Assembly: GCA_023334545.1 (NCBI GenBank)
Contig: JAADVB010000190.1
Span: 1-37,198 of the forward strand
Source of the DNA: Salisapilia sapeloensis CBS 127946
Lineage: Eukaryota > Protista > Oomycota
Direction of reading: 5' to 3'
DNA: 37,198 nt
In this document: positions 29,366 to 36,476 of the stretch, one piece after another
How positions within the stretch are numbered: position 1 is the stretch's first letter
Layout of the letters: each line of letters opens with the position of its first letter
Position numbers and translations under genes: made by a program
The notes under the pieces: generated by a model
Database searches by the model: none
The model's input: only the letters and a program-made list of their open reading frames with translations
Told to the model about the DNA's origin: nothing

Positions 29366-31960
29366 TCATTCATACACTTGTGCCACGACATGATCAGGCC
29401 TCGTCGACTTAACTCGCTTAGCATCGTATGGTTTCTCACTCTTGAAATACTTAGTGCTGTTCAACAACGAAAACTTGGGCTTATCTACGCCATTTTTCGC
29501 TCCACGCATGATCATCTGTACCTGAATATCCGACAATACGCGTGGCCAGATCTGGACATCATAAACAAGTCCATGGAATCCATACCATCCTGCAAAGTCA
29601 GACGATGGCTTACAACGCAAGAGTCCACTCATGCACCCTGTTCCGACAGTCACATAGTTCAATCGGCGCCAGTCGCGATGGAGCTTACCACTCGTAGTCG
29701 AGACGAGATCTCCGTTCAAGTACACTGTCTGCGTCTGCTCACCATACGTGACGACACAATAGTGCCAAGTGTAGGTAGGTAGATCAGGAGACACGACTGT
29801 CGGCTCTTGGTCGTTCACAAAGGAGCAGCACAAGTCTCCTTTCGGGTCGACGACCACAAGTGGACGATGGGTGTAGGCCCAGCTCGGGTCTTCAAAGGAG
29901 GAATCTTGGCAACCTAAGAGCACACCACCCAAGAATGTATCGCTTGCTTCTGCTAGACTGAACCAAATACCGACAGAAAAGGAACCCCCGGATGTAGAAA
30001 ACATGCGTTCAGACGTCTGTGGCAATGTAATGTTGGAGCCACGGTCTCGGAATCGCGTATCAACGCGTAGACCGAGGAACCGATAGGCTTTCGATAGCAA
30101 CGACGGCTCCTTCCGGAATGCAAGGTCAATGGGACGTGGTAAGCTCTGGACGAGAGAGCCGACTTGCTGTCGCGTCATACCACTAACGTGCTTATTGTTG
30201 ACAGAAACGAGCACGTCTCCTAGTTCTACTTTGCCGGAAGCTTGGATCTCTCCTATAGCTCCTGATCCTGCCTGAAGGAACTTGCTAACTGTGATCTTGT
30301 TGCCTACTAGACCGATCTTGATACCAAGCCAACGTTGGTTCAAAGTGACAGTAGTCAACGGTCCAGGAGGTAGTCGAGTACTCGAGTGGGACGTGTCAAG
30401 GTCAAAGCTGGATTCGCTTACAGATCTACTGAAAGAGCTTCTGCTTTCCGTATACCTGTCCATCGATTGATCTCGACTTCGCCGAGCACGTGAGTGCATA
30501 GAAGACATACTCGCTTGACTCACTTGACGCTCCAAGATGTTTGTAGCGTCATCACCTTCCTTTTGCTCTGCATCGGCGAGACTGCTGAGGTCTGTGTGTA
30601 CGTCTAACATGGTCGGACGATCGGACGGTGTGAGAGCACACATTTTGCAAATTAGATTCCACGCCTCATCTTTGCTAGTCGCGTCTTCCGGTAGCATGCC
30701 TTGCGATATCTTTTCTTGAATCGTCGTGTCGTCCAGGAGTCCCCATGGTAGATCATTCGTCATCGCTTCAATGATGCACATACCAAAGGCGTAGACATCC
30801 GAAGCAGTCGTATGCCCTTCTCCTTGGATCAATTCTGGTGCGCTCCAACGAATAGATCCAGAGAGTGGTTTCGATGTGCTCCCTTGTGCAACTAGACAAG
30901 CTACTTTGGCCTTTCCATCGTCACTGACAAAGATATGACTGCCCCGGAGATCTGTATGGATGACATCTTGGTCGTGGAGATAGCCCAAGCCTTCAGCTGC
31001 TTGAGCTAAGAGACGAAAAAGTCGTCGACGATGGTCTGCGGACGTGTTCAAGTACGCTTCCAAAGTACATGGCACGGATGAACATTCCATGATCACGTAA
31101 GGATTAGCAAACGAGTTTCCTCCGAGTACTGACAGCAGATGATCATGCTTGAGCACTGTCCATTTATCCATGTGATCATCAAAGACACTTTTGCTATCGA
31201 CACTTGCCAGTCGATTGACTAGAACGTGTGTTTCCTCCGACTGCATCCATACAGCGTGAAACACTTTATATTGCGGCGTTGCGAAGACGACATGGTCGTC
31301 GATGCGGAGATCGTGCAAGGGAATGTACCACTGTGGTAGTGCAGGTACTCCACCTTGCGAAATGGAAACAAGTCGACGAAATACTGCCTTTAACACGTCT
31401 ACGTCTACAGCTTGGCAATGGCTCTTGTCGTCTGAAAGTATCGAGCTGTGAGATAGACAATGCTTGACTGCAGCCAAAGCCTCGACTTGACTGTCTGGCT
31501 CGGAACATGCTTCGATCAGACATTCTCCAAAGATTTCCTGCTGAAATAGCTCTCGAATGGATTGCAAGAGTGCATCCCAAGTTGCTTTCCATTCTGGGTA
31601 TGGATCCTGCGTTGGAATTTGAAAGCCAGCATACAGTATATCGAGCTTTTCCTGCATTTGATACAATTCTGGACAAGTATGTCTGTCGCAAATGCGTTGC
31701 ATAAGAGATGTACGACGGTGTTGATGCTCTGCTAGCATGATAAAGCGATCATAAAGTATTTCGAGCTGGAGGGTGTAGTATGAAAGGGGAGCTGCCTCCG
31801 TCACGAGATCTTTACTTTCCAGAAATGTGTCGTCAACTCCAGCTTCTTGCTCATCGTCATCCAGCTGGGAGACAAAGGCGTTGATGTTGAGCAGTCGGTC
31901 ATACGTCTTTGTGAACGCAGCCGAGAGCTCATAGAGCTCTTTGGATAGCACGCTTTCCAT
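29366..31960 (-). CDS. Helical N-terminal domain + TKL-type pseudokinase + PDZ + LamG/ConA-like domain protein
   Basis: Kinase fold recognised from PQWYIP, LLSVLGG, LGYLHDQDVIHTDLRGSH, IRWSAPE, SDVYAFGMCIIE, DRPTM. PDZ: WLGIKI...VELGDVLVSVNN...IDLAF. LamG-like: SFSVGIWF...GGVLLG...WHYCVVTY...VYLNG...TVGTG...GFHGLVYDVQIW. The ORF is open to ATG 31996. Confidence 0.85.
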   Translation of the reverse strand: MESVLSKELYELSAAFTKTYDRLLNINAFVSQLDDDEQEAGVDDTFLESKDLVTEAAPLSYYTLQLEILYDRFIMLAEHQHRRTSLMQRICDRHTCPELYQMQEKLDILYAGFQIPTQDPYPEWKATWDALLQSIRELFQQEIFGECLIEACSEPDSQVEALAAVKHCLSHSSILSDDKSHCQAVDVDVLKAVFRRLVSISQGGVPALPQWYIPLHDLRIDDHVVFATPQYKVFHAVWMQSEETHVLVNRLASVDSKSVFDDHMDKWTVLKHDHLLSVLGGNSFANPYVIMECSSVPCTLEAYLNTSADHRRRLFRLLAQAAEGLGYLHDQDVIHTDLRGSHIFVSDDGKAKVACLVAQGSTSKPLSGSIRWSAPELIQGEGHTTASDVYAFGMCIIEAMTNDLPWGLLDDTTIQEKISQGMLPEDATSKDEAWNLICKMCALTPSDRPTMLDVHTDLSSLADAEQKEGDDATNILERQVSQASMSSMHSRARRSRDQSMDRYTESRSSFSRSVSESSFDLDTSHSSTRLPPGPLTTVTLNQRWLGIKIGLVGNKITVSKFLQAGSGAIGEIQASGKVELGDVLVSVNNKHVSGMTRQQVGSLVQSLPRPIDLAFRKEPSLLSKAYRFLGLRVDTRFRDRGSNITLPQTSERMFSTSGGSFSVGIWFSLAEASDTFLGGVLLGCQDSSFEDPSWAYTHRPLVVVDPKGDLCCSFVNDQEPTVVSPDLPTYTWHYCVVTYGEQTQTVYLNGDLVSTTSGKLHRDWRRLNYVTVGTGCMSGLLRCKPSSDFAGWYGFHGLVYDVQIWPRVLSDIQVQMIMRGAKNGVDKPKFSLLNSTKYFKSEKPYDAKRVKSTRPDHVVAQVYE

Positions 31961-36476: not shown

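What the first reader, a model, noticed from the sequence alone, without database searches (positions are those of the whole stretch)
29366..36476. Candidate undescribed sensing/immune locus: one LamG-like domain shuffled onto a pseudokinase and two F-boxes, next to a non-RD LRR receptor kinase
Seen: three consecutive genes without signal peptides end in the same distinctive LamG/ConA-like subfamily domain (shared F.(F/V)..WF, GG(V/I)(L/V)LG.Q, (V/I)D..L.L.CS-like, W(Y/H)...(T/S)Y, V(Y/F)(L/V)(N/D)G, GTG, G(W/Y).GF.G.(I/V).D...(W/Y), and a terminal S(S/T)(R/Q)P). It is coupled to (i) helical NTD-pseudokinase-PDZ and (ii, iii) F-boxes; the fourth gene is a surface LRR kinase. Established: F-box + variable recognition domain = SCF substrate adaptor; non-RD LRR kinases are enriched among pattern-recognition receptors; helical-bundle + pseudokinase is the MLKL layout. 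Inference: a cytosolic recognition domain wired to alternative outputs (degradation versus signalling or cell death), resembling an innate-immunity or non-self-recognition module in an oomycete-like organism.
Basis: partly seen in the sequence, partly recalled or inferred. Interest (0 to 1): 0.8.

Follow-up and report, generated by a model that had tools for sequence, protein, structure and literature searches.

The report
Oomycete F-box/pseudokinase LamG gene cluster
Three neighbouring, expressed, intron-less genes share one LamG-type binding domain, twice behind an F-box (a ubiquitin-ligase adaptor) and once behind a dead kinase plus PDZ; the cluster recurs across oomycetes, but nothing here shows an immune role and the LRR kinase next door looks like a chance neighbour.

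Summary
Genes A (29366-31960, -), B (32132-33196, -) and C (33320-34372, +) each end in one Laminin_G_3 subfamily domain (about 30% identity, BLASTP E 1e-22 to 1e-37). RNA contigs show four separate intron-less transcripts and correct the starts of A, B and D.

A is a helical N-terminal domain, a TKL pseudokinase, a PDZ and a LamG. All 9 aligned orthologues lack the DFG aspartate. B and C are divergent F-box + LamG proteins.

An exhaustive profile search finds 83 clusters at E<1e-30. Named members are Pythium, Globisporangium, Phytophthora, Nothophytophthora and Lagenidium, plus F-box-LamG proteins in Rozella and a chytrid.

A's LamG falls in an A-type clade (SH-aLRT 99), and A's whole architecture is collinear in all orthologues, so the domain shuffling is old. 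An F-box-LamG gene lies beside or near the A-type gene in 4 of 5 informative loci, but these neighbours are not one orthologous clade. Another organism carries a tandem array of seven.

The LRR kinase D belongs to a common oomycete receptor-like TKL class and is absent from every other locus fetched. MLKL kinship is not supported.

Best reading: SCF substrate receptors plus a pseudokinase scaffold that share one recognition module. An immune role is speculation. The scan's first readers noted further F-box-LamG genes elsewhere in this genome; I did not check them.

The parts
29366..31960 (-). Gene A, 864 aa: helical N-terminal domain + TKL pseudokinase + PDZ + LamG + conserved C-terminal tail
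   Evidence: ORF. Transcript 5' ends lie at 31961-31986, so the ATG at 31960 is the start. Pfam kinase 90.6 bits and Laminin_G_3 41.8 bits. Orthologues are 35-38% identical over 830-870 aligned residues.
31322..31960 (-). A residues 1-213: helical bundle domain with no Pfam family
   Evidence: AF2 model pLDDT 81.5, pTM 0.74, with six main helices. No Pfam hit. No Foldseek match at E<1. MLKL N-terminal domain scores only Z 8.2 and 7.4.
30551..31321 (-). A residues 214-470: pseudokinase domain (VAIK Lys to Asn, HTD...H catalytic loop, no DFG)
   Evidence: Alignment of 9 orthologues: the DFG Asp is absent in all 9, and the beta3 Lys is lost only in the window protein. Nearest solved kinases are B-Raf, FAK and Src types.
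30101..30364 (-). A residues 533-620: PDZ domain, the best-conserved part of the protein
   Evidence: Pfam PDZ_6 and PDZ are sub-threshold here but above threshold in the P. cinnamomi orthologue. Mean pairwise identity among orthologues is 60%.
29369..30073 (-). A residues 630-864: LamG (Laminin_G_3) domain and the tail ending SRP.HVVAQVY
   Evidence: The LamG falls in the kinase-linked clade with SH-aLRT 99. The tail is modelled at pLDDT<50.
32132..33196 (-). Gene B, 354 aa: divergent F-box (about 33041-33175) + LamG (about 32210-32965) + basic tail
   Evidence: RNA contigs span 32069-33239. F-box-like 15.0 bits covering profile positions 6-41 of 47. Laminin_G_3 26.3 bits. Matches the family HMM over its full length, E 6e-87.
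33197..33319 (.). 123-bp divergent intergenic region between B and C (shared promoter region)
   Evidence: Transcript 5' ends of B lie at 33201-33239 and of C at 33295-33315, apart from one run (X2) whose contig also spans gene D and begins at 33229. Sequence.
33320..34372 (+). Gene C, 350 aa: divergent F-box (about 33329-33463) + LamG (about 33554-34294) + basic tail
   Evidence: RNA contigs span 33295-34395. Laminin_G_3 45.0 bits. F-box-like 14.2 bits. Atlas hit at 0.99 to an oomycete 'F-box domain-containing protein' cluster of 83 members.
34437..36476 (-). Gene D, 679 aa: signal peptide, Cys-rich region, LRR, acidic/Ser-rich stalk, TM segment, non-RD (HGD) kinase. Neighbour, probably not part of the unit.
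   Evidence: One RNA contig ends at 36483. Atlas hits at 0.97-0.98 to several oomycete LRR-TKL clusters. No homologue in loci L001-L007.

Best explanation
The stretch 29366-34372 is part of an old, persistent oomycete cluster of cytosolic proteins built around one Laminin_G_3 (LamG) recognition domain.

Genes B and C are F-box-LamG proteins. They most likely act as substrate receptors of SCF ubiquitin ligases: the F-box docks on SKP1-cullin, and the LamG sandwich, with its variable loops, binds the target, which is then ubiquitinated. They are probably sister paralogues from a local inverted duplication.

Gene A is a conserved orthologue found in each oomycete examined. The same LamG type, together with a strongly conserved PDZ, hangs on a catalytically dead TKL kinase with a helical N-terminal domain. 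A therefore most likely works as a non-catalytic scaffold or allosteric adaptor that reads the same class of ligand through PDZ and LamG.

The fusion that made A predates the split between this organism and the Pythium/Phytophthora group. F-box-LamG genes keep being born and lost around A and elsewhere (tandem arrays, fragments).

Gene D, the LRR receptor-like kinase, is an ordinary member of a large oomycete family and a chance neighbour.

Shown: architectures, transcription, family range, age of the fusion, recurrent linkage.
Inferred: SKP1 binding, the LamG as the recognition surface, a shared ligand class, and the scaffold role of A.
For: - Domain calls and paralogy.
- F-box at family level: 25 of 52 members hit PF12937. 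The relatives scanned singly pass the curated cut-off.
- Transcription: four separate intron-less transcripts in four RNA runs.
- Family size: 83 clusters at E<1e-30. Named members are nearly all oomycetes.
- Age of the fusion: the A-type LamG is its own clade at SH-aLRT 99. The full-length architecture is collinear in 9 orthologues.
- Conservation within A: the DFG Asp is absent in 9 of 9, while PDZ (60%) and LamG (52%) are the best-conserved parts.
- Linkage: an F-box-LamG gene is adjacent to the A-type gene in P. oligandrum and in L006, lies 7 kb away in P. cinnamomi, and is adjacent here. P. oligandrum has four family genes within 24 locus tags.
- Expansion: a tandem array of seven genes plus three fragments.
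- B and C as sisters: this gives the best likelihood found.
- D: absent from the other loci and a member of a common class.
Against: - No binding, ubiquitination or ligand data exist.
- The F-box of B and C themselves is below the Pfam threshold.
- The F-box-LamG neighbours of A in different species are not one orthologous clade, so the linkage could partly be inertia of a duplication hot spot.
- One informative locus (L005) has no F-box-LamG gene within about 2.7 kb on either side.
- The AU test does not formally reject the three window LamG copies as one clade (p 0.072).
- The full-length model of A is weak (pTM 0.49), and its tail is unresolved.
- A still keeps the catalytic-loop Asp, so some atypical activity is not excluded.
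Confidence: 0.6

Rival explanations
1. One reading: an innate-immunity or non-self-recognition module. A cytosolic LamG sensor is wired either to degradation (F-box) or to an MLKL-like cell-death executor (A), and is coupled to a surface non-RD LRR pattern receptor (D).
For: - The F-box-LamG family is expanded in tandem arrays with fragments, a birth-and-death pattern like that of immune-linked F-box families.
- A has a helical bundle plus a pseudokinase.
- The MLKL N-terminal domain appears among the helical matches (Z 8.2), and MLKL_N clusters appear at 0.83 in the Atlas.
- D is non-RD.
Against: - None of 9 orthologues hits MLKL_N, and Foldseek finds nothing.
- Z 8.2 is under the tool's noise level for helical folds.
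- The kinase domain is nearest to B-Raf, FAK and Src types, not MLKL or RIPK.
- The same N-terminal domain occurs on an apparently active kinase.
- A is a conserved orthologue found in each oomycete examined, with its strongest constraint on PDZ and LamG. That is unlike a fast-evolving immune gene.
- D is not linked in any other locus.
- No induction or selection data exist.
Confidence: 0.1
2. Passive relic: the cluster is only the footprint of tandem duplication and one old gene fusion. The genes have since taken unrelated roles, and their adjacency has no functional meaning.
For: - The neighbouring F-box-LamG genes in different species are not orthologous.
- L005 lacks the neighbour.
- Other F-box-LamG genes are said to be dispersed in this genome (unchecked scan notes).
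- Wider synteny persists as well: the PNK/CPD gene lies near the A-type gene both here and in P. cinnamomi. This shows that plain synteny inertia exists in the region.
Against: - Adjacency or near-adjacency is seen in 4 of 5 informative loci, although A orthologues are only 35-38% identical.
- P. oligandrum keeps four family genes within 24 genes.
Confidence: 0.25
3. Cytosolic glycan surveillance: the F-box-LamG proteins are functional analogues of the animal FBA-type F-box lectins (FBXO2/6/27) or of plant F-box-Nictaba. They would bind sugars exposed on misfolded glycoproteins or damaged organelles.
For: - LamG / ConA-like folds often bind carbohydrates (general knowledge).
- Weak Pfam co-hits to sialidase and trans-sialidase lectin modules and to 3-keto-disaccharide hydrolase.
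- Atlas neighbours include sialidase N-terminal lectin domains.
Against: - No sugar- or Ca-binding site could be checked.
- There is no close solved structure (best E 5e-05 to an S-layer protein).
- LamG domains bind proteins and steroids as well as sugars.
Confidence: 0.15

Closest known systems
F-box proteins with a ConA-like beta-sandwich recognition domain (animal FBXO45/FSN-1 with SPRY; FBXO2/6 with FBA; plant F-box-Nictaba)
   Same: An N-terminal F-box followed by one beta-sandwich recognition domain. The proteins are cytosolic, small (300-400 aa), and expanded by tandem duplication.
   Different: The recognition domain is Laminin_G_3 (PF13385), not SPRY, FBA or Nictaba. The F-box is divergent. 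The family is mainly oomycete, with members in Rozella and chytrids. I found no functional study.
Oomycete-specific TKL kinases (P. infestans kinome, Oomycete Subfamily 1, PITG_11566 with a C-terminal PDZ; PMC3019232)
   Same: TKL kinase domain followed by a PDZ. Database names of the orthologues are 'TKL/TKL-CCIN protein kinase'. The paper counts one PDZ-bearing TKL in P. infestans.
   Different: The paper mentions neither the LamG domain, nor the loss of the DFG Asp, nor the linkage to F-box-LamG genes. That PITG_11566 is the orthologue of A is my inference and was not tested.
MLKL (vertebrate and plant)
   Same: The order of parts: a helical N-terminal bundle and then a TKL-group pseudokinase.
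   Different: No MLKL_N signature. Only a weak, non-specific structural match. The kinase is nearer to B-Raf. PDZ and LamG are added. The N-terminal domain is shared with an apparently active kinase.
Bacterial Ser/Thr kinases fused to Laminin_G_3 (Planctomycetota, Verrucomicrobiota)
   Same: A kinase domain and a LamG_3 domain in one protein (Atlas rows 2-4 at 0.85-0.87).
   Different: Those are bacterial PknB-type kinases. These are Atlas leads only, and no homology beyond the shared domains is shown. There is no PDZ and no helical N-terminal domain.
Oomycete LRR receptor-like TKLs (16 LRR-bearing TKLs in P. infestans, PMC3019232)
   Same: Gene D has signal peptide, LRR, TM segment and TKL kinase. 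It hits such clusters at 0.97-0.98.
   Different: D is non-RD (HGD) and has a short C-lobe. It has no conserved link to the LamG cluster.

Membership tests
Laminin_G_3 / ConA-like (PF13385) | Match to the family profile above the curated cut-off (27.6 bits) | tested here: met
   A scores 41.8 bits and C scores 45.0 bits. B scores 26.3 bits, just under the cut-off, but is a full-length paralogue of C (E 1e-37). All 52 aligned family members hit PF13385.
F-box proteins (SCF substrate receptors) | F-box motif of about 45 aa matching PF00646 or PF12937 | tested here: inconclusive
   B scores 15.0 bits and C scores 14.2 bits against a 24.3-bit cut-off, though each covers nearly the whole profile. 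At family level, 25 of 52 members hit at E<=0.01. Rozella, Kappamyces, P0015, P0012 and P0089 pass the cut-off.
F-box proteins (SCF substrate receptors) | Binding to SKP1 and assembly into an SCF complex | not testable with these tools
   This needs Y2H, co-IP or a complex model with the organism's SKP1.
Protein kinase superfamily, pseudokinase class | Kinase fold with loss of residues essential for catalysis (VAIK Lys, HRD Asp, catalytic Asn, DFG Asp) | tested here: met
   PK_Tyr_Ser-Thr scores 90.6 bits. The DFG Asp is absent in 9 of 9 orthologues. The window protein also lacks the beta3 Lys and the catalytic Asn.
PDZ domain | Match to PF00595 or PF17820 above the cut-off | tested here: inconclusive
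   The window protein scores 19.7 and 17.0 bits, below the cut-offs. The P. cinnamomi orthologue scores 26.5 against 23.2. The model shows a beta-rich domain at residues 535-616 with pLDDT about 70-85.
MLKL | N-terminal four-helix bundle of the MLKL_N type (PF22215) | tested here: not met
   No hit in 9 orthologues even at E<=10. Foldseek finds nothing at E<1. VIA Z of 8.2 and 7.4 lies within the range the tool calls common for helical bundles.
MLKL | Pseudokinase domain closest to the MLKL/RIPK branch of TKLs | tested here: not met
   The best solved relatives by sequence and by fold are B-Raf, FAK and Src-family kinases. MLKL is not in the top 50-60.
MLKL | Membrane permeabilisation or cell death after activation | not testable with these tools
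   Needs an experiment.
Non-RD LRR receptor kinases acting as pattern receptors | Signal peptide, extracellular LRR, TM segment, and a kinase lacking Arg before the catalytic Asp | tested here: met
   The sequence of D shows all four: LRR_4 and LRR_8 hits, an HGD catalytic loop, and a retained DFG.
Non-RD LRR receptor kinases acting as pattern receptors | Functional or conserved genomic coupling to the LamG genes | tested here: not met
   No D homologue is present in loci L001-L007.

The most novel reading that the evidence does not exclude
A and the neighbouring F-box-LamG proteins form one conserved 'degrade or signal' switch in oomycetes. The pseudokinase-PDZ-LamG scaffold and the SCF receptors compete for, or hand over, the same ligand through homologous LamG domains. 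The near-invariant C-terminal tail of A may gate its own PDZ. The locus persists, with turnover of the F-box partners, because the partners co-evolve with changing targets, which could include non-self molecules.
Probability: 0.12. Interest if true: 0.7.

Novelty: new variant of a known kind. Interest (0 to 1): 0.42.

Why it matters
F-box proteins define what a cell degrades, and oomycetes include major crop and animal pathogens whose ubiquitin-ligase adaptors are almost unstudied.

This work defines a sizeable, mostly oomycete family (83 sequence clusters) in which a LamG domain is the presumed recognition part. It shows that the same domain was recruited long ago onto a conserved pseudokinase-PDZ scaffold. 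It also shows that the two kinds of gene tend to stay together in the genome.

That gives a concrete, testable pair of proteins for asking what cytosolic LamG domains bind. It removes an over-reading (an MLKL-like immune locus with a surface receptor) that the evidence does not carry.

Tried and rejected
- **Word-based protein searches:** C alone gave 1 hit and the family alignment gave 4, too insensitive for a census. The exhaustive profile search was needed.
- **Exact look-up of C:** not on record, so the genome's own annotation could not be used.
- **MLKL kinship:** tested by Pfam, Foldseek, VIA wide search, a PDB profile search of the N-terminal domain and kinase-domain searches. It is not supported.
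- **PDZ-tail docking in the full-length AF2 model:** the tail has pLDDT<50, so there is no answer.
- **dN/dS on the seven-gene array:** the paralogues are 43-55% identical, so synonymous sites are saturated. Not attempted.
- **Orthology of the F-box-LamG neighbours of A across species:** rejected by the tree.
- **Context of the metagenomic relative P0174:** the gene sits at a contig end and is uninformative.
- **Closest solved LamG structure:** nothing better than E 5e-05.
- **Literature:** no paper on oomycete F-box-LamG proteins or an oomycete MLKL-like gene.
- **AU test of the three window LamG copies as one clade:** lnL 34 worse, but p 0.072, so not formally rejected.
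Full report
**1. What is there**

The ORF list shows four long ORFs at the reported place. Contigs from four RNA runs of the same organism lie on them as separate pieces with no joints, so all four genes are transcribed and have no introns.

The contig ends correct three starts:
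- A begins at 31960 (MESVLS..., 864 aa), not 31996.
- B begins at 33196 (MRPSCS..., 354 aa), not 33562.
- D begins at 36476 (MMISRS..., 679 aa).

B and C are divergent around a 123-bp spacer. C and D are convergent, and their transcript ends abut at about 34389-34395. Depths differ, but the tool warns against using them as expression measures. I claim only that all four genes are expressed.

**2. The shared domain**

Pfam calls Laminin_G_3 in A (41.8 bits), C (45.0 bits) and marginally B (26.3 bits).
- B and C align over their whole length: 29% identity, E 1e-37.
- The C-terminal 247 residues of A align with C at 30% identity, E 5e-24.
- A vs B gives E about 1e-22.

In a 52-member family alignment the core motifs and the tail V.C.RP.E are conserved, and the P is invariant. 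Part of the motif list is the generic Laminin_G_3 core. No other copy lies in the window.

**3. The other domains**

*Gene A.* A has a kinase fold (90.6 bits) and sub-threshold PDZ hits. In an alignment of nine orthologues the DFG aspartate is replaced in all nine, by N, S, H, A or C. The beta3 lysine is kept in all but the window protein. The catalytic-loop Asp is kept in eight. A is therefore a conserved pseudokinase.

Identity among the orthologues is highest in the PDZ (60%) and LamG (52%). It is lowest in the N-terminal domain (31%) and the linker (22%). The proteins end in a nearly invariant tail, SRP.HVVAQVY.

*Genes B and C.* Each has only weak F-box hits (15.0 and 14.2 bits, covering the full profile). 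But 25 of 52 aligned relatives hit PF12937. Clear members pass the curated cut-off: Rozella, Kappamyces, P. oligandrum P0015, P. nicotianae P0012 and P0089. I accept the F-box at family level.

*Gene D.* D has a signal peptide, LRRs, a TM segment and a kinase with HGD and DFG. It sits at 0.97-0.98 with several oomycete LRR-TKL clusters in the Atlas. The P. infestans kinome paper lists 16 LRR-bearing TKLs, so D belongs to a common class (PMC3019232).

**4. Family and range**

An exhaustive HMM search with the LamG profile found 11,149 proteins at E<=0.001 and 83 representatives at E<1e-30. The best hits fall into a few length and architecture classes:
- 300-400-aa F-box-LamG proteins;
- about 900-1000-aa kinase-PDZ-LamG proteins;
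- 640-650-aa proteins with an F-box and two LamG domains;
- one AAA_33 - F-box - LamG protein.

Named members are Pythium oligandrum, P. insidiosum, Globisporangium ultimum, G. splendens, Phytophthora nicotianae, P. cinnamomi, P. boehmeriae, Nothophytophthora and Lagenidium. They carry automatic names such as 'F-box domain-containing protein', 'LamG-like jellyroll fold domain-containing protein' and 'TKL/TKL-CCIN protein kinase'.

Outside oomycetes, Rozella allomycis and the chytrid Kappamyces have bona fide F-box + LamG proteins of the same subfamily.

In a tree of 111 LamG domains these eukaryotic proteins separate from multi-LamG proteins with support 96 (the multi-LamG group consists of two chytrid proteins plus unnamed, mostly very long proteins). 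The kinase-linked LamG domains form their own clade with support 99. The window's A is the first branch of that clade.

So the three window copies are one subfamily, but they are not each other's closest relatives. The LamG of A was fused before this organism split from the Pythium/Phytophthora group, and the collinear full-length orthologues show the same thing. The AU test for forcing the three copies together costs 34 lnL units, but p is 0.072, which is not a formal rejection. B and C as sisters give the best likelihood found, with the caveat that both branches are long.

**5. Is the cluster conserved?**

- In P. oligandrum the A orthologue lies directly downstream of a 640-aa F-box-LamG-LamG gene. 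Two further F-box-LamG genes lie within 24 locus tags.
- In locus L006 a 426-aa F-box-LamG gene is the divergent upstream neighbour.
- In P. cinnamomi an F-box-LamG gene lies about 7 kb upstream, with three genes in between.
- In L005 neither neighbour is of the family.
- L001 is too short upstream to tell.

That makes 4 of 5 informative loci, although the A orthologues are only 35-38% identical. The neighbouring F-box-LamG genes are not one clade: the tree needs 5 changes, and starred branches force at least 4. The picture is a persistent cluster with turnover, not a fixed orthologous pair.

Another organism has seven F-box-LamG genes in 10.5 kb plus three fragments. Those paralogues are 43-55% identical.

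D has no counterpart in any of these loci.

The gene between the F-box-LamG gene and the A orthologue in P. cinnamomi that carries AAA_33 and a tRNA-ligase CPD domain is homologous to the window ORF at 12612-14507 (E 3e-65). Some plain synteny therefore also survives in the region.

**6. The MLKL idea**

The N-terminal 213 residues fold confidently into a helical bundle (pLDDT 81.5, pTM 0.74). The tests against MLKL gave the following:
- Foldseek finds nothing at E<1.
- The wide VIA search lists the MLKL N-terminal domain at Z 8.2 and 7.4, ranks 8 and 28, among designed bundles and many unrelated helical proteins. The tool says Z under about 13 is common for such folds.
- No orthologue hits MLKL_N, even at E<=10.
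- A profile search of the PDB finds nothing.
- The kinase domain is closest to B-Raf, FAK and Src-type kinases by sequence and by fold.
- The second half of the N-terminal domain plus the kinase aligns with a 509-aa Globisporangium TKL (E 9e-36) that keeps HND...N and DFG.

The bundle is therefore a family-specific extension of an oomycete TKL group, not a mark of a dead-kinase executor. Atlas scores of 0.83 to MLKL_N clusters are leads only. The layout resemblance stands. Membership does not.

**7. How it most likely works**

B and C: an F-box to SKP1-cullin, and the LamG as the substrate-binding part. This rests on established knowledge of F-box proteins and is inferred here.

A: a non-catalytic scaffold. 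Its most constrained parts, the PDZ and the LamG, do the binding, and the pseudokinase and N-terminal domain provide regulated interaction surfaces. This is also inferred.

A shared ligand class for the A-type and F-box-type LamG domains is a hypothesis suggested by homology and recurrent linkage. What the ligand is, sugar or protein, is open. No close solved structure exists. The full-length model is too weak (pTM 0.49, tail pLDDT<50) to say whether the tail docks on the PDZ.

**8. Comparison with what is known, and novelty**

F-box plus a ConA-like sandwich is a known design (FBXO45-SPRY, FBXO2-FBA, F-box-Nictaba; my own knowledge). With Laminin_G_3 it is, as far as my searches reach, unstudied.

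The kinome paper on P. infestans lists one TKL with a C-terminal PDZ, PITG_11566. This is probably the A orthologue, but I did not test that. The paper mentions neither the LamG nor the neighbours.

I rate this a new variant of a known kind. Nothing supports an immune function. The LRR kinase should be dropped from the unit.

Notes by the scan's first readers say that this genome holds at least four more F-box-LamG genes elsewhere, and other LamG fusions. I could not check them.

Noticed in passing
window 32021-32057: A 20-bp perfect palindrome (GGTGTACCCATGGGTACACC) flanked by a direct repeat (GTGAAAAGGT). It lies between the 5' end of A's transcript (31961-31986) and the 3' end of B's transcript (32069-32089). 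It could be a promoter or a 3'-end element.
   Followed up: partly
window 12612-14507 (-) and L004 10001-13435: The window's AAA_33/CPD-type gene (a polynucleotide-kinase-like domain plus a tRNA-ligase phosphodiesterase domain) is homologous (32% identity, E 3e-65) to the ORF immediately upstream of the A orthologue in Phytophthora cinnamomi. This is a remnant of wider synteny.
   Followed up: partly
L007 3040-13519: A tandem array of seven F-box-LamG genes (43-55% identical) plus three gene fragments in 10.5 kb of another organism (Logan run SRR15309574). The pattern is birth-and-death evolution.
   Followed up: partly
P0097 (Rozella allomycis), P0094 (Kappamyces sp.): The same LamG subfamily, with an F-box above the Pfam threshold, occurs in early-diverging fungi. 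Chytridium and Phlyctochytrium have two-LamG proteins without an F-box hit. Ancient origin versus transfer is open.
   Followed up: partly
P0089 (503 aa, Logan/ENA): A further architecture of the subfamily: an AAA_33 P-loop kinase domain + F-box + LamG.
   Followed up: no
L004 14127-17191: In P. cinnamomi the A orthologue is split into two overlapping ORFs in different frames (14127-16382 and 16223-17191), so there is an intron, a frameshift or an assembly error. The public gene model (P0070, 1123 aa) joins it to the upstream AAA_33 gene.
   Followed up: partly
window 34389-34440: The convergent genes C and D have only 64 bp between their stop codons, and their RNA contig ends abut or overlap (C ends at 34391-34395, D ends at 34389-34440).
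   Followed up: no
window 29369-29497 (A residues 822-864): A near-invariant C-terminal tail, SRP.HVVAQVY, is present in all nine A-type orthologues. It may be an intramolecular PDZ ligand or a closing strand of the LamG sandwich. The model is uninformative here.
   Followed up: partly
window 26752-27750 (-) and 28324-29334 (+): Two divergently oriented zinc-type alcohol dehydrogenase / quinone reductase paralogues (ADH_N + ADH_zinc_N) lie directly beside gene A. The RNA contig of A runs on into the second one (convergent 3' ends).
   Followed up: no
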